64,000 nucleotides of DNA from the IMG/VR virus record IMGVR_UViG_3300027759_000045, positions 186,001 to 250,000 of that record; one strand, given 5' to 3'. The translations under genes were made by a program, and so were the position numbers. Under the pieces are notes generated by a model. That model ran no database searches and was not told the DNA's origin. It saw only the letters and a list, made by a program, of their open reading frames with translations. Shown here piece by piece: positions 15,484 through 26,002 of the stretch (within the stretch, counting starts at the first letter, position 1; every line of letters starts with the position of its first letter).

Positions 15484-17292
15484 ATGGCTGAAACAGAAAA
15501 TGGTCGTAAGCGCGGTTGGCTCAAGTATTTCAAAGTGGCCGCAGGTGACGCCAACGGCCAACTGAGTCCTATTTCTGGGCGTTATCAAGCAGGCATACCC
15601 GGCTACGATCGCCAAACCGGCTACACTGGCAACACCGGAACCGGAAATGATTTTGCATTTCGTAACTATGCCAGCAGACTGCCTGAAGTGTACTCGGGCC
15701 ATCCCAATCGTGTTGAACGTTACAATCAGTATGAAAACATGGATCTTGATTCGGAAATCAATGCATGTCTAGATATCATTGCAGAGTTCAGCACACAGAA
15801 CAACGAAGACAACAACACACCGTTTGATATCACATTCAAAGACACTCCCACTGATCACGAAGTGGAAATTATTAAAAAACAACTGCAACAGTGGACCAAA
15901 CTGAACAAGCTGGACCAGCGCATGTTCAAACTGTTCCGCAACACCATCAAGTACGGTGACCAGGTGTTTGTGCGTGATCCAGAAACATTTGAAATGTACT
16001 GGGTTGACATGGTCAAGGTCAGCAGAGTCATTGTGAATGAATCAGAAGGCAAGCGTCCTGAACAGTACATCATCCGTGACATCAATCCCAACTTTCAAAA
16101 CCTAAGCATTGCACAAAAGACCACCAGCGACTACTATGTGAGTAGATCAACAGGTAGTACAGGACAAACAAACTATTCCAACAGCAACGGCGGCGCCGGA
16201 GGTGGCGGAGGTGGCACAGTGGGCAACAGCAGATTTGCACAGGCCATGAACGAAACTTGTATTGATGCCAAGCACGTGGTGCACATGAGTTTGAATGAAG
16301 GATTGGATTACTTTTGGCCATTTGGACAAAGTATCTTGGAGAACATCTTTAAAGTTTACAAGCAAAAAGAACTGCTGGAAGACTCTGTGCTGATCTATCG
16401 TGTGAGTCGTGCTCCAGAGCGTAGAGTGTTTAAAATTGATGTGGGTAATATGCCCAGCCACATGGCCATGGCCTTTGTGGAACGTGTTAAAAACGAAATG
16501 CACCAGCGCAGAATTCCCACAGTGAATGGTGGCGGACAAAATCTAATGGATGCCAGTTACAATCCACTCAGCATCAACGAAGATTACTTTTTCCCACAAA
16601 CAGCCGACGGACGTGGTTCCAGTGTAGACACCCTACCAGGCGGCACAGGACTGGGCGAAATTGATGATTTGAAGTATTTCAACAACAAAATGGCCCGTGG
16701 TCTGCGTGTGCCTAGTAGTTACTTGCCCACTGGTCCTGACGACTCAGACCGTGCAATGAACGACGGAAAAGTAGGCACAGCACTGATACAAGAGTACAGA
16801 TTCAATCAATATTGTGAACGTTTACAGCGTTTAATAATGCAGAAACTGGATGACGAATTCAAGATGTTCATGAAATGGCGTGGTTTTAACATTGACAACA
16901 GCATTTTTGATATTGTACTAGGCCCACCACAGAACTTTGCCAGTTACCGTCAAGCAGAAATGGACACCAGCAGAGTTGGTACATTCAGTACACTGGAGCA
17001 GTTGCCCTATATGAGCAAACGTTTCTTAATGGAACGTTACCTAGGGCTGAGTCAAGAAGAGATTGTGGAGAACGAAAAACTCTGGCGTGAAGAACGCGAT
17101 CAGCCTGAGTTAAGCACCACACAAGGACAAGATCTGCGTAGTATTGGTATTACTCCAGCAGGTATGGAAGCAGATATCAACACCGGTGAAGAACTGGCAG
17201 CTATGCCGCCTGCAGGTAGTCCTGATGTTCCTGGTGCCCCAGCTGGTCCTGGAACAGCACCCACAGCCGCTCCTCCGCCAGCGGCAGCATAA
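15484..17292 (+). CDS. gp20: Portal protein
   Basis: LEDSVLIYRVSRAPERRVFKIDVGNMP, EDYFFP..GRGSSVDTLPGG..LGEIDDLKYF..K..RGLRVP. Confidence 0.96.
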   Translation: MAETENGRKRGWLKYFKVAAGDANGQLSPISGRYQAGIPGYDRQTGYTGNTGTGNDFAFRNYASRLPEVYSGHPNRVERYNQYENMDLDSEINACLDIIAEFSTQNNEDNNTPFDITFKDTPTDHEVEIIKKQLQQWTKLNKLDQRMFKLFRNTIKYGDQVFVRDPETFEMYWVDMVKVSRVIVNESEGKRPEQYIIRDINPNFQNLSIAQKTTSDYYVSRSTGSTGQTNYSNSNGGAGGGGGGTVGNSRFAQAMNETCIDAKHVVHMSLNEGLDYFWPFGQSILENIFKVYKQKELLEDSVLIYRVSRAPERRVFKIDVGNMPSHMAMAFVERVKNEMHQRRIPTVNGGGQNLMDASYNPLSINEDYFFPQTADGRGSSVDTLPGGTGLGEIDDLKYFNNKMARGLRVPSSYLPTGPDDSDRAMNDGKVGTALIQEYRFNQYCERLQRLIMQKLDDEFKMFMKWRGFNIDNSIFDIVLGPPQNFASYRQAEMDTSRVGTFSTLEQLPYMSKRFLMERYLGLSQEEIVENEKLWREERDQPELSTTQGQDLRSIGITPAGMEADINTGEELAAMPPAGSPDVPGAPAGPGTAPTAAPPPAAA

Positions 17293-18404: not shown

Positions 18405-19052
18405 ATGGCTCGTTACTTACAAGAACACTTGACATTCTCACAAGCGCAGGTAAAACTGCTGAGTGAGGATGCTCCTGACGGTTCTGGTAAAACGCTTTAC
18501 ATGGAAGGCATCTGCATTGAAGGTGATAAACGCAATGCCAATGACAGAATATACCCTGCTCACGAAATTCGCAAAGCAGTTGGCACTATCAATGAACAAC
18601 TGCTTAGTGGCAATTCGGTATTGGGAGAAGTAGATCACCCAGATGATCTTAAAATTAACTTAGACCGTGTGAGTCACATGATTGATAAAATGTGGTGCGA
18701 CGGTGCAATTGGTTATGGAAAATTGAAGATATTACCAACGCCAATGGGTCAACTGGTTAAAACCATGTTGGACAGCGGTGTTAGATTAGGTGTTTCAAGT
18801 CGTGGGTCAGGAAACGTCGACGACAGAACAGGACATGTCAGTGATTTCGAAATAGTCACTGTAGATGTAGTTGCACAACCCAGTGCTCCAAATGCATATC
18901 CCACAGCAATCTACGAAGGCCTCATGAACATGAAGTACGGACATAGACTGTTGGAAGTGGCACGTGAAGCCGGCGCGGACAACAAGGTACAAAGATATTT
19001 GAAAAGTGAAGTAGTAAAACTGATCAAAGATCTTAAAATTAGGGAGGAATAA
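18405..19052 (+). CDS. gp21: Prohead protease
   Basis: N.N.R.Y, LGEVDHP, VSH, TP.G, GVSSRGSG, DVVAQPSAPNA. Confidence 0.95.
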   Translation: MARYLQEHLTFSQAQVKLLSEDAPDGSGKTLYMEGICIEGDKRNANDRIYPAHEIRKAVGTINEQLLSGNSVLGEVDHPDDLKINLDRVSHMIDKMWCDGAIGYGKLKILPTPMGQLVKTMLDSGVRLGVSSRGSGNVDDRTGHVSDFEIVTVDVVAQPSAPNAYPTAIYEGLMNMKYGHRLLEVAREAGADNKVQRYLKSEVVKLIKDLKIREE

Positions 19053-19054
19053 GC

Positions 19055-20155
19055 ATGTTAGATGCTATTAAACCGTTACTAGATAGCGACTTGATCACCG
19101 AGGAAACTCGCCAGGAGATCAACGAAGCTTGGGAAGCCAAGCTGGTTGAAGCTCGTGAACAGGCTCGTGCAGAACTCCGCGAAGAGTTTGCACAACGCTA
19201 TGAACATGACAAAACAGTGATGGTGGAAGCCCTAGATCGTATGGTAACAGATGGTCTTACTGCAGAGATTCAAGCCGTTGCTGCCGAAAAAGCACAACTG
19301 GTAGAAGATCGCGTTCGTTTCCAAAGCAAGATGAATGAAAATGCCACAAAGTTTAACAGCTTTATGGTCACTAAACTTGCTGAAGAAATTAGCGAACTGC
19401 GTCGAGATCGTAAGCAACACAATGAAGGACTAGAAAAACTAGAAGGCTTCATTGTGCATGCATTGGCTCGCGAAATTCAAGAATTCGCCACAGACAAACG
19501 TGATGTTGTAGAAACAAAAGTTCGTCTGGTACGTGAAGCACGTGTCCAATTGGAAGCATTGAAAGCACGATTTGTAACAGAATCTGCACAGAAAATGAGT
19601 CAATCTGTTAGCCGTCATCTAAAGGCTGAACTCAGTCAGTTACAAGAAGACATCCGAGTTGCTCGTGAGAACAATTTTGGTCGTCGTATCTTTGAAGCAT
19701 ACGCAAGTGAATTTGGTGCTACCCATCTCAACGAGAAAGCGGAAGTGCGTAAATTACACGATACAATTGCAAACAAAGATGCAAAATTGTCTGAAGCCAT
19801 CAAACTTATTAGGAACGCAAAAGTTCTTAACGAGTCAAAAGAGCGTGAAATACGAATGATCAAAGAGACCAACCAACGTGCAAACGTTATGGACGAATTG
19901 CTGGCTCCTCTTAACCAAGAGAAGCAAGAAGTCATGCGTAATTTACTCGAAAGCGTACAAACAACACGTTTGAAAAACGCATTTGAAAAGTATCTACCGG
20001 CTGTTCTAACCGACCGCTCTGTAAAAGCCTCCAAAGTGATTACAGAATCCGTGTCTACAGTCACCGGCGATAAATCTGCCCGTAGCCAAATTGAAGACGA
20101 CAGTGCTGACCACAGCAATGTCATTGACATCAAGCGTTTGGCAGGGTTAAATTAA
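19055..20155 (+). CDS. gp22: Prohead scaffolding/core protein
   Basis: Coiled-coil, Glu/Lys-rich, directly between gp21 and gp23. Confidence 0.8.
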   Translation: MLDAIKPLLDSDLITEETRQEINEAWEAKLVEAREQARAELREEFAQRYEHDKTVMVEALDRMVTDGLTAEIQAVAAEKAQLVEDRVRFQSKMNENATKFNSFMVTKLAEEISELRRDRKQHNEGLEKLEGFIVHALAREIQEFATDKRDVVETKVRLVREARVQLEALKARFVTESAQKMSQSVSRHLKAELSQLQEDIRVARENNFGRRIFEAYASEFGATHLNEKAEVRKLHDTIANKDAKLSEAIKLIRNAKVLNESKEREIRMIKETNQRANVMDELLAPLNQEKQEVMRNLLESVQTTRLKNAFEKYLPAVLTDRSVKASKVITESVSTVTGDKSARSQIEDDSADHSNVIDIKRLAGLN

Positions 20156-20173
20156 TTTTAAAGGAGACATTAA

Positions 20174-21370
20174 ATGTCACAACAATTATTAGAAGGTCGC
20201 TGGGACGAGACCAAGGAAGCACTGCTCGAAGGTCTAAACGGCTCCAAGCGCAGTAGTATGAACGTGATTCTTGAGAACACACGCAAGTACTTGAAAGAAA
20301 ACGCAAGTGCTGGTTCCACAGCCGCTGGCAACATCGCTACATTAAACCGTGTGATTCTACCAGTTATCCGTCGTGTAATGCCAACAGTTATCGCTAACGA
20401 GTTGGTAGGCGTTCAGCCAATGACAGGCCCAGTTGGTCAAATTCACACTCTACGTGTGCGTTACGCTGGTAACTTGACTGATAACTCAGCAGCCGCAACC
20501 AGCGTCACAGCCGGTCAAGAAGCATTGAGTCCATTCACTATTGCCACTGCATACTCTACAGTGGGCAAAGACACAACATCAACATCAACTTACACCGGTG
20601 CTAACACAGCAACGCTTGAAGGTAACGGCGGTAAGCAAATTTCCGTTCAAATCTTGAAGCAAGCAGTTGAAGCCAAGACACGTAAGTTGCAAGCACGTTG
20701 GACATTTGAATCTGCACAAGACGCACAGGCCATGCATGGTATTGACGTTGAAGCAGAAATCATGGCCGCACTGGCACAAGAGATCACTGCTGAGATTGAC
20801 CAAGAGATTCTCTTGAGTTTGAGCACATTGGCTGCTGTTGAGTACACATACAACCAAGCTACCGTTAGTGGTACTGCTACGTTTGTGGGTGACGAACATG
20901 CTGCTTTGGCAGTGTTGATCAACCGTACAGCTAACTTGATCGCCCAACGTACACGTCGTGGCGCAGGTAACTGGGCAGTGGTATCTCCAGCCAGTTTGAC
21001 AGTGTTGCAATCAGCAACAACTAGTGCGTTTGCTCGTACTACAGAAGGCACATTTGAAGCACCTACAAACACCAAGTTTGTTGGTACATTGAACGGTGCT
21101 ATGCGTGTGTTTGTTAACAGCTACGCTAGCGACACTGCTAACGTATTGGTTGGCTACAAAGGTACTAGTGAGGCAGATGCTGCCGCATTCTATTGCCCAT
21201 ACATTCCGTTAATGAGTAGTGGTGTGGTTCTTGACCCATCAACATTCGAACCAGTCGTGTCATTTATGACTCGCTACGGATTCGTAGAACTCACGAATAC
21301 TGCAAGTTCGTTTGGTAATGCTGCCGACTATGTCGGGGAAATAGCAGTACAAAATCTATCATTTAGTTGA
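20174..21370 (+). CDS. gp23: Major capsid protein
   Basis: RRVMP..IANELVGVQPMTGPVG, KQAVEAKTRKLQARWT.E.AQD, EI..EIDQE, FYCPYIPL, FMTRYG. Confidence 0.97.
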   Translation: MSQQLLEGRWDETKEALLEGLNGSKRSSMNVILENTRKYLKENASAGSTAAGNIATLNRVILPVIRRVMPTVIANELVGVQPMTGPVGQIHTLRVRYAGNLTDNSAAATSVTAGQEALSPFTIATAYSTVGKDTTSTSTYTGANTATLEGNGGKQISVQILKQAVEAKTRKLQARWTFESAQDAQAMHGIDVEAEIMAALAQEITAEIDQEILLSLSTLAAVEYTYNQATVSGTATFVGDEHAALAVLINRTANLIAQRTRRGAGNWAVVSPASLTVLQSATTSAFARTTEGTFEAPTNTKFVGTLNGAMRVFVNSYASDTANVLVGYKGTSEADAAAFYCPYIPLMSSGVVLDPSTFEPVVSFMTRYGFVELTNTASSFGNAADYVGEIAVQNLSFS

Positions 21371-21403
21371 TATTTTATTCATCTCAGGGATGGGAAGAAA
21401 CAG

Positions 21404-21427
21404 AAAAGCGCCGTAAGGCGCTTTTTT
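21404..21427 (+). terminator. Rho-independent terminator after gp23
   Basis: AAAAGCGCC-GTAA-GGCGCTTTTTT. Confidence 0.9.
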
Positions 21428-21428
21428 G

Positions 21429-21457
21429 TTGACTTTTGCACCTATAAATGTTATTAT
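21429..21457 (+). promoter_or_regulatory. Sigma70-like promoter for the HNH gene
   Basis: TTGACT, 17 nt, TATTAT with extended TG; a TAAATA box also at 21472-21477. Confidence 0.55.
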
Positions 21458-21482
21458 GGAGTTGACAAACATAAATAATCAT

Positions 21483-22235
21483 ATGAACAAATATAAACAA
21501 TGGTACAACAATATTACAGAACGAGCCAAACATCGTGTTCTGGATTCTTACACAGAAAGTCATCATATAGTACCACGCAGTTTAGGAGGCAGTAACAACC
21601 TAGATAATTTGGTCAATCTCACAGCCAGAGAACACTTTGTCTGTCATTGGTTGTTGGTTAAAATGACCACAGGACAAGACCATTACAAAATGCTAAATGC
21701 ACTTAGAATGATGCGAGCAGAAAAGCAAGGACAGAGTAGATATAATACAAAAATTACCGCACGAGTGTATGAAAGCATTAAACAAGAGTATGCAGAATTA
21801 CAAAGCAAACAATTTACCGGAACAGGAAATGGAATGTTTGGCAAACATCATACACAAGAAGCCAAAGATAAAATACGCCAAAAAAATCTAGGAAAAAAAT
21901 TAACTCCAGAACAGATTGAAAAACTTAAAAAAGCAACAACTGGCAAGAAGAAACCACCTATAACAGATGAGCATAGGGCAAAGCTATCAGTTGCACAATC
22001 AGGAAAAAATAATCCACGATATGGTGTAGAAGTATCTGCTGAAACTCGAGCAAAAATATCAGAGAAAGCAAAAGGTCGTAAGCAGTCAGTGGAAACAGTA
22101 CAAAAGAAAGCCAATGCTATACGTGGATTAAAACGTGAAAAAAAGCTGTGTCCGCACTGTGATCAACTGGTAGCAGTGAATGGCCACGCTCGCTGGCACG
22201 GCGATCACTGTGGCCAACTAAATACTAGATCTTAA
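21483..22235 (+). CDS. Free-standing HNH homing endonuclease with NUMOD3 repeats
   Basis: ESHHIVPRSLGGSN...NLVNLTAREHFVCHWLL; NUMOD3-like GKHHTQEAKDKI, TDEHRAKLS, SAETRAKISE; C-terminal CPHC...H..C. Start reassigned to MNKY at 21483. Confidence 0.9.
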   Translation: MNKYKQWYNNITERAKHRVLDSYTESHHIVPRSLGGSNNLDNLVNLTAREHFVCHWLLVKMTTGQDHYKMLNALRMMRAEKQGQSRYNTKITARVYESIKQEYAELQSKQFTGTGNGMFGKHHTQEAKDKIRQKNLGKKLTPEQIEKLKKATTGKKKPPITDEHRAKLSVAQSGKNNPRYGVEVSAETRAKISEKAKGRKQSVETVQKKANAIRGLKREKKLCPHCDQLVAVNGHARWHGDHCGQLNTRS

Positions 22236-22247
22236 AAGGAACTTGAT

Positions 22248-22961
22248 ATGGCAGTCACAATAGGACCAGGATGGTCAATCGGCCCAGGCGTAGCACTAGG
22301 CACTGGCTCGTCAATCTCAAACGGTAGTATATTGTTTGACGGCACAAATTATCTCACCGTGCCCAATAACACAGCATTTGATCAAAACAGCGGTGCTTGG
22401 ACTGTGGAATCTTTTGTGTACCCAACTGCTAACATTGAAGAGTACATCTACATGCAAAACACTGTGGGATTCTTGGGCATTGCCTACTACTATGGTAGCT
22501 TTCGTGTGGACCAAAGAGGTAATTATCGAATAAGCACCCCATTGACTTACGGCATAAACAACTGGTATCATGTGGCCATGACTTACAATGGGGCAGGCAC
22601 TGTGACTTTATGGGTGGACGGAGTATCGGTGGGTACCTGGGCCAGCAGTGGGTTGGTTGCTTCGGCGCTCACAACTGAAATAGGTTCGGTTGCAATGGGG
22701 CTTAACCCTTGGTTCGGTAACATATCAAATCTGCGTGTGGTCAAAGGTGTGGCAGTTTACACCGGTGCATTCACTGTGCCCACAGCACCACTTGCAACCA
22801 CACAGAGTGCAGGAACCAACATCTCGGCTATTACAGGTACACAAACACAGTTATTGTTGAATACCTATCAGGGTGCCGGATTCTTAACAGACGCATCAAC
22901 CAATAACTTTACTGTAACAAACAATGGTAGTGCAACCAGTGCCGCATTAAATCCATTTTAA
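22248..22961 (+). CDS. LamG/concanavalin-like virion protein with N-terminal IGPGWSIG motif
   Basis: WTVESFVYP, WYHVAMT, GNISNLRVVKGVAVYT, T.LLL. Confidence 0.8.
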   Translation: MAVTIGPGWSIGPGVALGTGSSISNGSILFDGTNYLTVPNNTAFDQNSGAWTVESFVYPTANIEEYIYMQNTVGFLGIAYYYGSFRVDQRGNYRISTPLTYGINNWYHVAMTYNGAGTVTLWVDGVSVGTWASSGLVASALTTEIGSVAMGLNPWFGNISNLRVVKGVAVYTGAFTVPTAPLATTQSAGTNISAITGTQTQLLLNTYQGAGFLTDASTNNFTVTNNGSATSAALNPF

Positions 22962-22971
22962 GGAATAAATT

Positions 22972-23742
22972 ATGACAGTATCAATTGGACCAGGATGGAG
23001 CATTGGACCCGGATGGACGATAGATGGTGGCCCTGTTGCCACCGGCAGCATGAATTTTACTCCGGCTGCCGCGTATCTACAGACACCCGTCAGTAGCCCC
23101 GGTTCTACCAACATCAATTTGCTGACCGGTGGTCAACTGACAACTTCAAGTGTATTCACGCTGGAAGCATTCATCAACATCACTTCATTCAATGGAACCA
23201 AGACCGGTCAAACCGGCGAAGAAAGCTGGATCATAGGCAATTACACAGCAGACCTGGCCACAACTCCTTGGGGCTGGAATGTGCAGAGCAATGGTTATTT
23301 GCAATTGTTCATATACAATGGTTCATATAACAAATTGGTGGCAACCACAACACAACTGTCAGAAGGCGTCTGGTACTATGTGGCCATGACCATAAATGGA
23401 ACTAGTGTTTACTTGTTTGTTGATGGTGTGTTGCAAACAAATCAGCCATCGGGCGCCAATATCATTACCACAAATGTAGGTTCATCACAAGTGACCGATC
23501 AATTGACACTGGGATCCAGTTCCGCTGGCAGATATTTCAATGGCTACATGAGCAGTGTGCGTGTGACCAAGTCAGCCCTGTACACTTCAGGATTCTCTGC
23601 TCCGTCGGCACCATTGCCCAACATAGCCAACACTTCGTTGTTGCTACAAGTGAATTCAGCCGGCACGTACCTTGCTGACTCCAGCAACAACAACTTTACC
23701 ATGACCAATAGCGGTGTAATTTACAGCACCTTACACCCATAA
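22972..23742 (+). CDS. LamG/concanavalin-like virion protein, paralog of 22248
   Basis: FTLEAFI, WYYVAMT, FNGYMSSVRVT, TSLLL; same N-terminal motif. Confidence 0.8.
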   Translation: MTVSIGPGWSIGPGWTIDGGPVATGSMNFTPAAAYLQTPVSSPGSTNINLLTGGQLTTSSVFTLEAFINITSFNGTKTGQTGEESWIIGNYTADLATTPWGWNVQSNGYLQLFIYNGSYNKLVATTTQLSEGVWYYVAMTINGTSVYLFVDGVLQTNQPSGANIITTNVGSSQVTDQLTLGSSSAGRYFNGYMSSVRVTKSALYTSGFSAPSAPLPNIANTSLLLQVNSAGTYLADSSNNNFTMTNSGVIYSTLHP

Positions 23743-23748
23743 AATATC

Positions 23749-23883
23749 ATGATCAATCAAATAAAATATTCAGGTTTGTTCCCGGAAAAACATTCTAGTC
23801 CAATTGGTACCACACTGGGATTACCGCAGCCTAAGCCCGCAGCACCTGTTGTGCCTGTGCAACAGCAACCGGTTAAATCTTAA
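23749..23883 (+). CDS. 44-aa hypothetical peptide
   Basis: Hand-translated MINQIKYSGLFPEKHSSPIGTTLGLPQPKPAAPVVPVQQQPVKS*; fills the gap, below the track cut-off. Confidence 0.4.
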   Translation: MINQIKYSGLFPEKHSSPIGTTLGLPQPKPAAPVVPVQQQPVKS

Positions 23884-25033
23884 ACAATCGCAAGTGTAGT
23901 TTGATTCGTTCAACAACACTGGCCCAGTCGCCCATTTGGGGTTGACGGAACAGTCTTGCAGTGGCATACCAAGGCGTGTCGTCTCTGTTCAGCAACCAAC
24001 GCCAGCAAGGTGCATAGTTGTTCAGCATGATCCAAGTGGGCTTGCCCAATGCCGCACTTAAATGGGCTGTGGCAGTGTCAACACTGACCACCACATCAAG
24101 ATTTGCAACCAGAGCGGCAGTGTCTGCAAAGGTGTTTACCCCACCAGGGAAACAGCGTACTCCCACTGACACTAGTTCTTTTTCTTCTTCAGCAGTACAG
24201 TCAGTTTGTAAATTATACCATTCGTAATCTGCGTGTGATCGAATCATGGCCAACATGGTCTCAAACGGCATGGCCTTGTGCTGATTGATCCAACTGTCAC
24301 GTCGCCCTGACCAGGCAAAGCCCACTCGTAATTTATTTTTAATTCCCAAGTTTCTGCGCCAGTCTACAACCAATGCAGGATCAGGATTTAAGTATTGAAT
24401 CACAGTGGGCAAGTTGTCAACCCGAACGTTTAATTTGCCAGGCAAGCTCATTATAGGAAGCCAGTAATCAAATACATCACCTGGCGGTTCGGCATAACTG
24501 ATCACTCGAACTCCACGTCCAATTTCACTAGATTGAATCAAAGGGATTAGGCTGTCTGTGACCTGCACTGTCACAGTGGCACCAATGTTTTTTAAGTTCT
24601 GTATAAATCGCACAAACTGTATAATGTCACCGTGTCCCTGTTCTCCGCGGATAAAAATTGTTTTACCCGTTAAATCTTCGCCATTCCACACAGGCCATGT
24701 ATAGTTGGGAATTGTACCTTTCAAATGTTCAAAATTGTGTCGTGCTTCGTATGCAGGCCAGCCACGCACATAGTCTCCACTCAGCAAGTAGGCCACTGCT
24801 AAATTAAAATGGTGTGTGACATTGGCCGGATCCAACTGTATGGCACGTTGTAAAAACGGAACAGCGCCTACTGGATCGCCTATCTCTCTCAACACATTGC
24901 CGTAGTTGTTGAACGCACCGGATGATCCTCTGTCCGTGGCCATTGCTACAGCGTACTGTTGCAGGGCCTGTTCTGGCAGGTGTTGTTCTCTGTAGGTATT
25001 GCCCTGAGCAATAAGTTGTTCTGTGTTTTGCAT
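23873..25033 (-). CDS. TPR-repeat glycosyltransferase (GT-B, GT9-like C-terminus)
   Basis: TPRs (AFNNYGNVL, HFNLAVAYL), EQGHGDIIQFVRF, DTAALVANLDVVVSVDTATAHLSAALGKPTW, CWRW..W Y. Confidence 0.88.
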   Translation of the reverse strand: MQNTEQLIAQGNTYREQHLPEQALQQYAVAMATDRGSSGAFNNYGNVLREIGDPVGAVPFLQRAIQLDPANVTHHFNLAVAYLLSGDYVRGWPAYEARHNFEHLKGTIPNYTWPVWNGEDLTGKTIFIRGEQGHGDIIQFVRFIQNLKNIGATVTVQVTDSLIPLIQSSEIGRGVRVISYAEPPGDVFDYWLPIMSLPGKLNVRVDNLPTVIQYLNPDPALVVDWRRNLGIKNKLRVGFAWSGRRDSWINQHKAMPFETMLAMIRSHADYEWYNLQTDCTAEEEKELVSVGVRCFPGGVNTFADTAALVANLDVVVSVDTATAHLSAALGKPTWIMLNNYAPCWRWLLNRDDTPWYATARLFRQPQMGDWASVVERIKLHLRLFKI

Positions 25034-25081
25034 GGCAATATTTACATGTTATTTTGGTACTGTAAAAATATCAATCACTCA

Positions 25082-25180
25082 TAAATACTTGTCAACGCAA
25101 TTGGGCGTTTTATGCGGAAGAATAAACCCTACCGCGTAGTGGCTAGAACCCACATCGGACTTCTTTAAGGAGAAAACAAA
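25082..25180 (+). promoter_or_regulatory. Late promoter plus structured 5' leader
   Basis: TAAATA at 25082-25087, three consecutive hairpins, SD AAGGAG at 25167-25172. Confidence 0.55.
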
Positions 25181-26002
25181 ATGGGACGTCCTCTTAAAAT
25201 TAAAAAAATTACCGAAGCTAGTTACAACTCTAGTACCGGTGCAAACCCTGGTGTTGATATTGGTTTCAATGCATTAACAAGTTTAACAGCACCGGTGTAT
25301 CCAAGTAGTACTTGGACTGGCACAGAATATCTTGGTGTAGTTGGCGGTGTACAACCCGCAACCGTTGCCAGTGCAGCTTATCCAATTGTCAAATGCGAAG
25401 TAAATATTACCAACAGCTATAGTGGTCAAACACCTGGATTGATTATTCGCCAAAAAGGTTCACGCAAGTTTATGGTTGCAACCACAGCTGGTATTGATCC
25501 TGCCAACACTGTAATTGGCGGCACACCCACAGTGGCCTTGCGTATTCGTGTAGTTGGTGACACCAACTGGACAGCCATGGGTGCTCCTGAAGGTTACGGC
25601 ATAGGCACAATCTTTACTCCTACAGCAGCCTCTGCAGGCGGCACCACCGGCACAGCGCAAGAAGTTGGTACATGTGTGTTACAAAATGATGTAACTCCCA
25701 CAGCCGGCAACATGAGTATCAGTTATTTCAGCAACGACTCAACTGAAACAGCAGTCAGCAAGTTGACCAACAAGTTCTTACAGAACTTTGCTGGAGGTTG
25801 TGCAGGCGGCGGAGCCAACACCGGTGACGTTTGGAATCCAACTCTAGTTGTTGACAACGTAACATTGGTTGACAACTTCTTCAGCGACGAAGGCACAACA
25901 GCCAAGTCTGGTGCTGAAATTGACACCTGGGGCACAAACGGTTCAGAGCAATTGGCAACAGGTGCACTGGATCTAGCAATTGTAGAGAACTACACAAGCT
26001 AA
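25181..26002 (+). CDS. Putative virion structural protein
   Basis: MGRPLK start, IIRQKGSRKF motif, Thr/Gly-rich, strong SD, followed by a terminator. Confidence 0.65.
   Translation: MGRPLKIKKITEASYNSSTGANPGVDIGFNALTSLTAPVYPSSTWTGTEYLGVVGGVQPATVASAAYPIVKCEVNITNSYSGQTPGLIIRQKGSRKFMVATTAGIDPANTVIGGTPTVALRIRVVGDTNWTAMGAPEGYGIGTIFTPTAASAGGTTGTAQEVGTCVLQNDVTPTAGNMSISYFSNDSTETAVSKLTNKFLQNFAGGCAGGGANTGDVWNPTLVVDNVTLVDNFFSDEGTTAKSGAEIDTWGTNGSEQLATGALDLAIVENYTS

What the first reader, a model, noticed from the sequence alone, without database searches (positions are those of the whole stretch)
21267..22235. Codon-usage break in the last ~35 codons of gp23 next to a free-standing HNH endonuclease
Seen: by eye, upstream gp23 uses AAC for Asn, ATT/ATC for Ile and GGT/GGC for Gly. 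The end reads CGC TAC GGA TTC GTA GAA CTC ACG AAT ACT GCA AGT TCG TTT GGT AAT GCT GCC GAC TAT GTC GGG GAA ATA GCA GTA CAA AAT CTA TCA TTT AGT TGA, with three AAT plus GGA, GGG and ATA, while the protein remains capsid-like. An HNH-NUMOD3 gene with its own promoters follows. Established: free-standing T4 homing endonucleases cut neighbouring conserved genes of competing phages and carry a resistant allele with them (intronless homing). Inference: the nuclease targets the gp23 3' end, and this stretch is the synonymously recoded immunity allele.
Basis: partly seen in the sequence, partly recalled or inferred. Interest (0 to 1): 0.6.

Follow-up and report, generated by a model that had tools for sequence, protein, structure and literature searches.

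The report
Recoded capsid-gene tail beside homing endonuclease
In this jumbo phage the last 32 codons of the major capsid gene are rewritten with synonymous, otherwise avoided codons right next to a selfish HNH nuclease gene, and about 100 related phages show the same link, so the stretch is most likely the nuclease's target made uncuttable in its own genome.

Summary
In the capsid gene (20174..21370) codons 1-366 use only AAC, GGT/GGC and ATT/ATC. Codons 367-398 (21272..21367) use AAT three times, plus GGA, GGG and ATA. Codon fitness in this tail lies about 10 SD below any other part of the gene.

A free-standing HNH-NUMOD3 gene follows (21483..22235). It comes after a terminator and has its own sigma-70-like promoter.

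The closest HNH-less relative, L001 (99% aa capsid), has native codons in the tail. There, 22 of 32 codons differ, all synonymously, against 57 of 366 in the body.

Among 70 related loci, 26 carry an HNH or GIY-YIG endonuclease at this spot. Of these, 25 have a recoded tail, against 7 of 44 loci without one (p = 1e-11). Twelve phylogenetically independent pairs give about 9 in the expected direction and 0 against it. Recoding starts at codon 367 in all of them.

All 18 HNH homologues of 53-84% identity that retain upstream sequence sit behind a capsid gene.

Best reading: intronless homing that targets the capsid 3' end, with immunity by synonymous recoding. Cleavage itself is untested.

One caveat: three HEG-less relatives share the first half of the window's recoded tract.

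This is a new member of a known kind, with unusually clear comparative support.

The parts
20174..21370 (+). Major capsid protein gene (gp23-like, 398 aa), the host gene of the element.
   Evidence: Pfam PF07068 Gp23, E = 9e-97. It is 62-67% aa identical to the capsids of jumbo phages such as PA5oct, GAP32 and Vibrio phage 2.275.O.
21272..21370 (+). Synonymously recoded tract: codons 367-398 plus a TGA stop. This is the inferred endonuclease target region in its resistant form.
   Evidence: Codon break. 22 of 32 codons differ from HNH-less L001, all synonymously. The excess of codons that are rare in HEG-less relatives is confined to these columns in HEG-bearing loci.
21272..21298 (+). Cluster A of recoded sites (codons 367-375: CGC TAC GGA ... 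CTC ACG AAT).
   Evidence: Sites 21274, 21280 and 21298 are among the sites most strongly associated with HEG presence (p = 1e-8 to 7e-8). The haplotype CGC-TAC-GGA is shared by 13 of 18 closer HNH loci, and AAT at codon 375 by 17 of 18. The same allele also occurs in HEG-less L146, L148 and L151.
21317..21349 (+). Cluster B of recoded sites (codons 382-392: AAT GCT GCC ... GTC GGG GAA ATA GCA GTA).
   Evidence: Sites 21325, 21337 and 21343 are the strongest associations (p = 7e-11, 2e-9 and 4e-6). Within the window's own clade this half separates HEG-bearing genomes from HEG-less ones.
21385..21397 (+). Conserved motif CAGGGATGGGAAG in the capsid 3' untranslated region. It is not specific to the endonuclease.
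   Evidence: Unique in the window. Present in many relatives with or without a HEG.
21404..21428 (+). Intrinsic terminator of the capsid transcript.
   Evidence: Stem-loop followed by a T run. Folding energy -27.1 kcal/mol, z = -6.3. Every relative has one at this position.
21429..21457 (+). Sigma-70-like promoter of the endonuclease cassette (TTGACT, 17 nt, TATTAT, with TG).
   Evidence: 10 of 12 consensus matches. The same arrangement is conserved in front of most HNH and GIY-YIG genes at this locus.
21470..21478 (+). Late-promoter-like motif CATAAATAA, 4 nt before the ATG.
   Evidence: Conserved as (A)ACATAAATAA before the HEG start codon in most cassettes. Similar TAAATA motifs precede other genes downstream of capsid genes.
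21483..22235 (+). Free-standing HNH-NUMOD3 homing endonuclease gene (250 aa) with a C-terminal Cys/His zinc-finger-like module.
   Evidence: Pfam HNH and NUMOD3, and phrog_655. Invariant residues are H27, H28, N42, H51 and H55 in the catalytic part, and C223, H225, C226, H239 and C243 in the C-terminal module. The gene is absent from L001, where 47 nt stand in for window 21401-23748.

Best explanation
The HNH gene is a free-standing homing endonuclease that spreads by intronless homing, and its target is the 3' end of the neighbouring capsid gene.

Proposed steps:
1. A phage carrying the gene co-infects a cell with a relative that lacks it.
2. The enzyme is made from its own promoter. It binds through its NUMOD3 repeats and C-terminal zinc-finger-like module to the native sequence of capsid codons about 367-392, and nicks or cuts there. 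That sequence is codon-optimal and therefore conserved among relatives.
3. Recombinational repair from the carrier genome copies the capsid tail, the terminator and the endonuclease gene into the victim.
4. The carrier itself is spared because third-codon positions of the target have been changed while the protein stays the same.

Several HNH and GIY-YIG lineages with a related DNA-binding end compete for the same site. This keeps selecting for further synonymous change and makes the tail a recombination hot spot.

Shown here: the codon break; its restriction to codons 367-398; its purely synonymous nature; its association with an endonuclease at this locus across many independent lineages; the domain make-up; the presence/absence polymorphism.

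Inferred: cleavage, the exact site, and resistance.
For: 1. Window against HNH-less L001: 22 of 32 tail codons differ, all synonymously, against 57 of 366 in the body. L001 has native codons.

2. Rate of codons rare in HEG-less relatives:
- HEG-bearing loci: tail 0.286, body 0.081.
- HEG-less loci: tail 0.066, body 0.054.
- Fisher p = 1e-11.
- 12 independent pairs: about 9 in the expected direction, 0 against, sign test p of about 0.004. The body control is not significant.

3. Presence or absence of the endonuclease needs at least 16 changes on the capsid-body tree.

4. Near-isogenic pairs, body divergence against tail divergence:
- L003/L004: 1.0% against 17.7%.
- L048/L043: 2.4% against 19.8%.
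- L021 (HNH)/L024 (GIY-YIG): 2.9% against 21.9%.
- L058/L059: 1.1% against 17.7%.

5. In L003/L004 the 226 nt upstream of the tail are identical, and the terminator between tail and endonuclease is almost identical. The recoding is therefore a patch, not simply contiguous donor DNA.

6. All 18 HNH homologues of 53-84% identity that retain upstream sequence sit directly behind a capsid gene. Of these, 17 have AAT at codon 375 and 13 have CGC-TAC-GGA at codons 367-369. In HEG-less loci the figures are 3 of 50 and 1 of 50.

7. The changes are not compositionally directed. The window's tail has 11 GC-to-AT and 8 AT-to-GC changes. HEG-bearing tails are on average richer in GC.

8. HNH and GIY-YIG proteins at this locus share the NUMOD3 plus Cys/His C-terminal region.

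9. No intron RNA is present.

10. Established knowledge: free-standing T4 endonucleases cut neighbouring conserved genes and are inherited with flanking markers (PMC2988022). T2 and T4 nrdB differ at the MobE nicking site (PMC2790892).
Against: - No biochemical or genetic test exists. The cut site could lie elsewhere, with the tail merely near it.
- L146, L148 and L151 lack any endonuclease yet carry the window's cluster A exactly. Seven of 44 HEG-less loci have partly recoded tails. These fit resistant relics or partial conversion tracts, but they weaken a one-to-one link.
- L049 and L087 carry an HNH with an almost native tail.
- Tail similarity does not track endonuclease similarity in the first set of loci.
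- The site-wise p values are not corrected for phylogeny, and that set was enriched by searching with the HNH.
- The structure model gave no significant match to solved homing endonucleases.
Confidence: 0.7

Rival explanations
1. Passive hitch-hiking. The tail is simply flanking donor DNA that was co-converted when the endonuclease gene moved in from a diverged phage. It marks a recombination junction but has no role in immunity, and the nuclease may cut somewhere else (for example in the intergenic region).
For: - Co-conversion of flanks is established for T4 endonucleases (PMC2988022).
- The window's terminator and promoter region is about 90% identical to that of L010 and L087-L091, although the capsid bodies are only about 83% identical. 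Some flank therefore does travel with the gene.
- Mosaic relatives show crossovers inside the tail.
Against: - Donor capsid tails should carry the codon preferences seen in all 44 HEG-less lineages. Instead HEG-linked tails are enriched four- to five-fold in codons that are rare everywhere else.
- In L003/L004 the DNA between tail and endonuclease is not diverged.
- Pairs with near-identical capsid bodies but different endonucleases have different tails.
Confidence: 0.15
2. A local mutational effect. Either repeated nicking and repair, or compositional bleed from the AT-rich insert, makes the last 100 nt mutate faster. Purifying selection leaves only the synonymous changes. No selection for resistance is involved.
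For: - In the window, GC3 falls from 0.41 in the body to 0.31 in the tail, next to an HNH gene with GC3 of 0.27.
- HEG-linked tails are hyper-diverse among themselves: synonymous codon identity is 0.39, against 0.58 in the body.
Against: - The changes are compositionally balanced in the isogenic pairs.
- Across loci, HEG-bearing tails are richer in GC than HEG-less ones (0.458 against 0.419).
- The tract has the same sharp start at codon 367 in many lineages.
- The intergenic DNA closer to the insert is unchanged in L003/L004.
- Repeated self-nicking would itself imply that the target lies here.
Confidence: 0.08
3. Regulatory recoding. The synonymous changes adjust an RNA structure or a signal at the capsid mRNA 3' end that controls the downstream endonuclease or capsid expression.
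For: T4 endonuclease genes are often controlled by upstream RNA structures, and by promoters embedded in the 3' end of the preceding gene (PMC2988022).
Against: - The recoded sequences differ from locus to locus, so no common motif is created.
- Predicted folding energy of the tail does not differ between HEG-bearing and HEG-less loci (p = 0.14). The window gives -21.5 and L001 gives -21.2 kcal/mol.
- A strong terminator and a separate promoter stand between the tail and the gene.
Confidence: 0.04
4. Chance fluctuation of codon use at the end of a gene.
For: The tract has only 32 codons.
Against: - The tail lies about 10 SD below the body windows.
- The pattern is replicated in 25 further loci and is absent from 37 of 44 loci without an endonuclease.
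Confidence: 0.01

Closest known systems
Intronless homing by free-standing T4 endonucleases (SegF/gene 56, SegG/gene 32, MobE/nrdB)
   Same: - An endonuclease gene sits between conserved genes.
- It is present in some relatives and absent in others.
- It cuts a neighbouring essential gene of the competitor and is inherited together with flanking markers.
- The carrier differs from the victim by nucleotide polymorphisms at the site (PMC2988022 and PMC2790892).
- MobE is likewise an HNH domain with a distinct C-terminal DNA-binding part.
   Different: - The host gene here is the major capsid gene of an uncultured 347-kb phage.
- The inferred target lies only about 110-210 nt from the endonuclease gene.
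- The cassette has an early-type sigma-70-like promoter, whereas the review reports none for T4 endonuclease-specific promoters.
- Nothing has been tested experimentally.
- The evidence is a population-wide synonymous signature rather than crosses.
T4 segD (GIY-YIG gene between genes 23 and 24)
   Same: A free-standing homing-endonuclease gene directly downstream of the gp23 capsid gene (PMC2988022, Table 1). GIY-YIG genes occupy the same position in 11 of the relatives found here.
   Different: - segD is antisense to genes 23 and 24 and has no promoter of its own. The gene here is co-directional and has promoters.
- The window's enzyme is HNH, not GIY-YIG.
- That review lists the segD target as unknown.
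WHO elements of Torulaspora yeasts (endonuclease gene plus an alternative 3' half of FBA1)
   Same: - The endonuclease gene lies downstream of an essential host gene.
- The element brings a cleavage-resistant version of the gene's 3' part.
- Diverse endonucleases cluster at one locus.
- The target region diversifies in an arms race (bioRxiv 10.64898/2026.08.13.744650, abstract).
   Different: - WHO elements are eukaryotic, and their enzymes are LAGLIDADG proteins.
- Here no second copy of the capsid 3' end exists anywhere in the genome.
- The changes here are purely synonymous.
HEGs near essential phage genes (ICP1 and other phages)
   Same: Homing endonuclease genes cluster beside capsid, terminase and replication genes, mark boundaries of genetic exchange, and shuffle nuclease and DNA-binding domains (PMC10055350).
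   Different: As far as the passages I searched show, that work does not describe localized synonymous recoding of the neighbouring gene.

Membership tests
HNH homing endonucleases of the Mob / I-HmuI type | HNH (beta-beta-alpha-metal) catalytic motif | tested here: met
   PF01844 scores 21.9 bits against a cut-off of 21.4. H27, H28, N42, H51 and H55 are invariant in 12 homologues. The motif aligns with the HNH of a group II intron maturase and of pyocin AP41.
HNH homing endonucleases of the Mob / I-HmuI type | Modular DNA-binding region (NUMOD repeats, or a C-terminal zinc finger or helix-turn-helix) | tested here: met
   PF07460 NUMOD3 scores 74.6 bits, with three matches in the frame. A C-terminal C-x-HC...H-G-x-x-C module is invariant.
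HNH homing endonucleases of the Mob / I-HmuI type | Overall fold similar to solved I-HmuI-like enzymes | tested here: inconclusive
   AlphaFold model: mean pLDDT 73, pTM 0.44. Foldseek against the PDB gave no match with E <= 0.001. The protein is elongated and multi-module, so a whole-chain search is a weak test.
Free-standing homing endonuclease gene (intronless homing) | Not inside an intron or intein; the host gene is intact | tested here: met
   No group I or group II intron match in 19000-25500. The capsid ORF is complete and 99% identical to that of L001. The endonuclease is a separate ORF behind a terminator and a promoter.
Free-standing homing endonuclease gene (intronless homing) | Presence/absence polymorphism at the same site among close relatives | tested here: met
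   L001 lacks window 21401-23748. L004 against L003 and L010 shows a clean insertion between the terminator and the next ORF. At least 16 gains or losses are needed on the capsid tree.
Free-standing homing endonuclease gene (intronless homing) | The enzyme cleaves or nicks the endonuclease-less allele at a defined site in a neighbouring gene | not testable with these tools
   Indirect only: the synonymous divergence is localized to codons 367-398.
Free-standing homing endonuclease gene (intronless homing) | The carrier's own allele is resistant | not testable with these tools
   Indirect only: 25 of 26 carriers have a recoded tail, against 7 of 44 non-carriers.
Free-standing homing endonuclease gene (intronless homing) | Preferential inheritance with co-conversion of flanks in mixed infection | not testable with these tools
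   Consistent signs only: the terminator-promoter region is shared among HNH loci with diverged capsids, and mosaic tails occur in L146-L151.
WHO-like element (endonuclease plus replacement 3' part of the host gene) | The displaced old 3' part of the host gene is retained as a fragment | tested here: not met
   Only one match to capsid residues 330-398 exists in the 346,856-bp genome.

The most novel reading that the evidence does not exclude
The 3' end of the capsid gene in this group of freshwater jumbo phages is the arena of a synonymous-site arms race.
- Several HNH and GIY-YIG endonuclease lineages reuse one NUMOD3/zinc-finger DNA-binding end.
- All of them aim at the codon-optimal, and therefore conserved, native sequence.
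- Carriers and survivors escape by scrambling third codon positions at a cost in codon fitness.
- The 100-nt tract thereby becomes a hypervariable silent immunity barcode and a recombination hot spot.
- HEG-less recoded alleles would be resistant relics.

This would be a phage counterpart of the yeast WHO/FBA1 conflict, played out entirely at silent sites.
Probability: 0.45. Interest if true: 0.7.

Novelty: new member of a known kind. Interest (0 to 1): 0.55.

Why it matters
Free-standing homing endonucleases shape which markers survive when related phages co-infect, but targets are known for only a handful of T4 enzymes.

Here the target of a whole set of uncultured-phage endonucleases can be read from sequence alone, to within about 100 nt, with candidate critical bases at 21274, 21280, 21298, 21325, 21337 and 21343.

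Nature has also provided the alleles needed for a clean test:
- native in both halves (L001);
- half-recoded (L146);
- fully recoded (the window).

The case also shows that strong codon bias in a highly expressed gene can create the conserved silent sites that a selfish nuclease exploits. Escape then overrides codon optimisation.

A local codon-usage break next to a nuclease gene may therefore be a usable general signature for finding homing targets in metagenomes.

Tried and rejected
- megablast of the region against GenBank phages: no match. By protein, the closest cultured phages are only 62-67% identical, so they were useless for codon-level comparison.
- Rfam scan for a group I or group II intron around the gene: none found. 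The intron-encoded reading was dropped.
- PDB sequence search: only the short HNH motif matched.
- AlphaFold model plus Foldseek against the PDB: no significant match, so there is no structural support for or against I-HmuI likeness.
- Test whether tails co-vary with endonuclease identity or with capsid-body identity in the first 24 HEG loci: no significant correlation. The idea of one stable tail allele carried by each endonuclease lineage was weakened. It was partly rescued only for cluster A within the window's own HNH clade.
- Search for a donor of the window's tail among the 74 complete capsid genes: the best match is only 79% identical.
- RNA-structure explanation: no difference in folding energy.
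- AT-bias explanation: rejected.
- Search for a leftover native capsid 3' fragment, as in WHO elements: none found.
- Downstream ORFs of the HEG-less loci: unrelated genes (a desaturase, a radical SAM enzyme, a GDSL lipase, and unknowns). L055 and L060 were first scored as HEG-less and turned out to carry a GIY-YIG gene.
- The 308-aa ORF of L043, which has a partly recoded tail, stayed unassigned.
Full report
**What is there**

The window is part of a 346,856-bp virus record with direct terminal repeats. It carries T4-like head genes: a portal gene (15484..17292), a prohead protease gene (18405..19052), a scaffold-like gene (19055..20155), and a gp23-family major capsid gene at 20174..21370.

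Behind the capsid stop codon lie, in order:
- a conserved motif, CAGGGATGGGAAG (21385-21397);
- a strong terminator (21404-21428);
- a near-consensus sigma-70-type promoter with a TG extension (21429-21457);
- a late-type CATAAATAA motif (21470-21478);
- a 250-aa ORF (21483..22235) with an N-terminal HNH motif, NUMOD3 repeats and a C-terminal Cys/His module.

No intron RNA is detected, so the gene is free-standing.

**The observation**

The codon break is real and far beyond chance. Codons 1-366 use AAC 19 times out of 19, GGT/GGC 26 out of 26, and ATT/ATC 17 out of 17. Codons 367-398 use AAT 3 out of 3, plus GGA, GGG and ATA.

The Fisher p values are 6.5e-4 for Asn and 7e-3 for Gly. The mean log codon weight of the tail is -1.24, against -0.29 with sd 0.09 for body windows of 32 codons.

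GenBank phages were too distant to help. IMG/VR gave 80 loci with capsids of 81-99% aa identity.

The closest locus, L001, has a capsid 99% identical in protein and no endonuclease. In L001, 47 nt stand where the window has 21401-23748, which holds the HNH gene and two Laminin_G_3 genes.

L001 uses the native codons in the tail: CGT TAT GGC ... AAC ... GGC GAG ATT ... TAA. Against L001, 22 of the 32 tail codons differ, all synonymously. In the body 57 of 366 differ. The direction of change is compositionally balanced.

**The pattern across the group**

Of 74 complete capsid genes, 26 are followed directly by a homing-endonuclease gene. Fifteen of these are HNH and eleven are GIY-YIG, and most share the NUMOD3 plus Cys/His C-terminal region. 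The other loci have unrelated genes there.

I scored each codon as rare if fewer than 10% of endonuclease-less loci use it at that column for that amino acid:

| Loci | Tail (codons 367-398) | Body |
|---|---|---|
| With endonuclease | 0.286 | 0.081 |
| Without endonuclease | 0.066 | 0.054 |

Using a cut-off of 0.15 for the tail, 25 of 26 carriers are recoded, against 7 of 44 non-carriers (p = 1e-11).

The excess is confined to the last four 10-codon bins and starts sharply at codon 367. Stop codons follow the same split. TGA or TAG is used in 13 of 24 carriers as first scored. It is used in only 4 of 50 others, two of which proved to carry a GIY-YIG gene.

Presence of an endonuclease is scattered over the capsid-body tree, needing at least 16 changes. 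In 12 phylogenetically independent pairs, the tail is recoded in the carrier in about 9, never the reverse, and tied in 3 (sign test p of about 0.004). The same test on the body shows nothing.

**Near-isogenic pairs**

Four pairs of near-identical capsid genes are especially clear:

| Pair | Body divergence | Tail divergence |
|---|---|---|
| L003 (GIY-YIG) / L004 (none) | 1.0% | 17.7% |
| L048 / L043 | 2.4% | 19.8% |
| L021 (HNH) / L024 (GIY-YIG) | 2.9% | 21.9% |
| L058 / L059 (two HNH types) | 1.1% | 17.7% |

In L003/L004 all the tail changes are silent third-position changes. They fall in codons 367-373 and 382-392. The 226 nt upstream are identical, and the terminator between the tail and the endonuclease is almost unchanged.

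**The HNH lineage of the window**

Searching with the HNH protein gave 18 loci with 53-84% identical homologues and enough upstream DNA. Every one sits directly behind a capsid gene.

Seventeen of them have AAT at codon 375 and thirteen have CGC-TAC-GGA at codons 367-369, like the window. Among endonuclease-less loci these occur 3 and 1 times in 50.

The terminator-promoter stretch in front of the gene is also shared among these loci, even where the capsid bodies are only about 83% identical. Some flank therefore moves with the gene.

**Complications**

- Tails beside endonucleases are hyper-diverse among themselves. Synonymous codon identity is 0.39 in the tail against 0.58 in the body. Endonuclease-less loci give 0.54 and 0.59. 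In the first set of loci, tail similarity follows neither endonuclease similarity nor capsid-body similarity.
- An exact-match search with the window's cluster A found six contigs. They form a mosaic series:
  - L146, L148 and L151 have capsids 99-100% aa identical to the window's and no endonuclease. They carry the window's first 47 recoded nucleotides exactly, followed by an L001-type native second half.
  - L147 has a capsid 100% aa identical to the window's and the same cluster A. Its second half differs, and it carries a GIY-YIG gene in place of the HNH.
  - L149 has a more distant capsid, the same cluster A, and a different HNH type.
- So crossovers fall inside the tail. In the window's own clade it is cluster B and the last codons (21317-21370) that go with having an endonuclease. 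Cluster A also persists without one.
- L049 and L087 have an HNH with a nearly native tail.

**Interpretation**

The gene is a free-standing homing endonuclease that attacks the native 3' end of the capsid gene of competitors. The carrier's copy is protected by silent substitutions.

This follows the established T4 model of intronless homing (PMC2988022 and PMC2790892).

The main rival is passive co-conversion of donor polymorphisms. It does not explain why endonuclease-linked tails use codons that are rare in every endonuclease-less lineage. Nor does it explain why the DNA between tail and gene is unchanged in L003/L004.

Mutational or compositional bias is contradicted. A regulatory RNA role is contradicted by the lack of any common motif or folding difference.

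What remains inferred is the cleavage itself, its exact position, and which of the two clusters confers immunity.

**Comparison with known systems**

- T4 itself has a GIY-YIG gene, segD, between genes 23 and 24, with target unknown in the 2010 review.
- Endonuclease genes beside capsid genes, and shuffling of nuclease and DNA-binding domains, are documented in other phages (PMC10055350).
- The closest conceptual parallel is the yeast WHO element: an endonuclease gene plus a resistant replacement 3' part of the essential FBA1 gene, locked in an arms race. Here, however, no displaced fragment remains and the changes are purely silent.

I therefore file this as a new member of a known kind. Its unusual value is that the target and its candidate critical bases can be read directly from natural variation.

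**Limits**

- The comparison loci are metagenomic contigs.
- Four loci had too little downstream DNA to classify.
- The second set of loci was selected with the HNH as query, so the site-wise p values are biased and not corrected for phylogeny.
- The structural test was uninformative.

Noticed in passing
window 25093-25183 (+): Rfam freshwater-2 RNA (RF02980) match of 68.6 bits (gathering score 49.9, E = 2e-9), ending at the start of ORF 25181..26002. It suggests a freshwater origin and a cis-regulatory leader for that gene.
   Followed up: no
window 21385-21397 (+): Motif CAGGGATGGGAAG between the capsid stop and the terminator. It is unique in the 64-kb window and conserved at this position in many relatives, with or without an endonuclease. 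Its function is unknown; it may be a 3' UTR element of the capsid mRNA.
   Followed up: partly
window 22248-23742 (+); L149 8560-8754: Two tandem paralogous Laminin_G_3 (concanavalin-like) genes lie between the HNH gene and the small ORF 23749..23883, and are absent from L001. L149 has a capsid only 85% nt identical to the window's. Yet the start of its lam2-like gene is 97% aa identical to the window's and sits directly after its own, different HNH. This looks like recent exchange of cargo next to endonuclease genes.
   Followed up: partly
L147 2130-2870; L146, L148 and L151 downstream of the capsid gene: The window's nearest relatives form a mosaic series at this locus. L147 has a capsid identical in protein but a GIY-YIG gene instead of the HNH. 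L146, L148 and L151 have no endonuclease, with half of the recoded tract and an unrelated 186-aa ORF downstream.
   Followed up: yes
L021/L024 and L058/L059 (capsid 3' ends and downstream genes): Pairs with 97-99% identical capsid bodies carry different endonuclease classes or subtypes and different recoded tails. This indicates rapid replacement of one endonuclease by another at the same site.
   Followed up: partly
the region downstream of the capsid gene in L001-L080: The slot behind the capsid terminator is hypervariable. Besides endonucleases it holds a fatty-acid desaturase (L045 group), a radical SAM protein (L011), a GDSL-like lipase (L073) and many unknown ORFs.
   Followed up: partly
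G000:C1:317274-317378 (-), outside the window: The only other NUMOD3-containing open frame in the genome (207 aa). No GIY-YIG domain was detected anywhere in the genome.
   Followed up: no
L075 2330-2806: A GIY-YIG-like endonuclease homologue lies upstream of the capsid region in this relative. This suggests further endonuclease insertion sites in the head-gene cluster.
   Followed up: no
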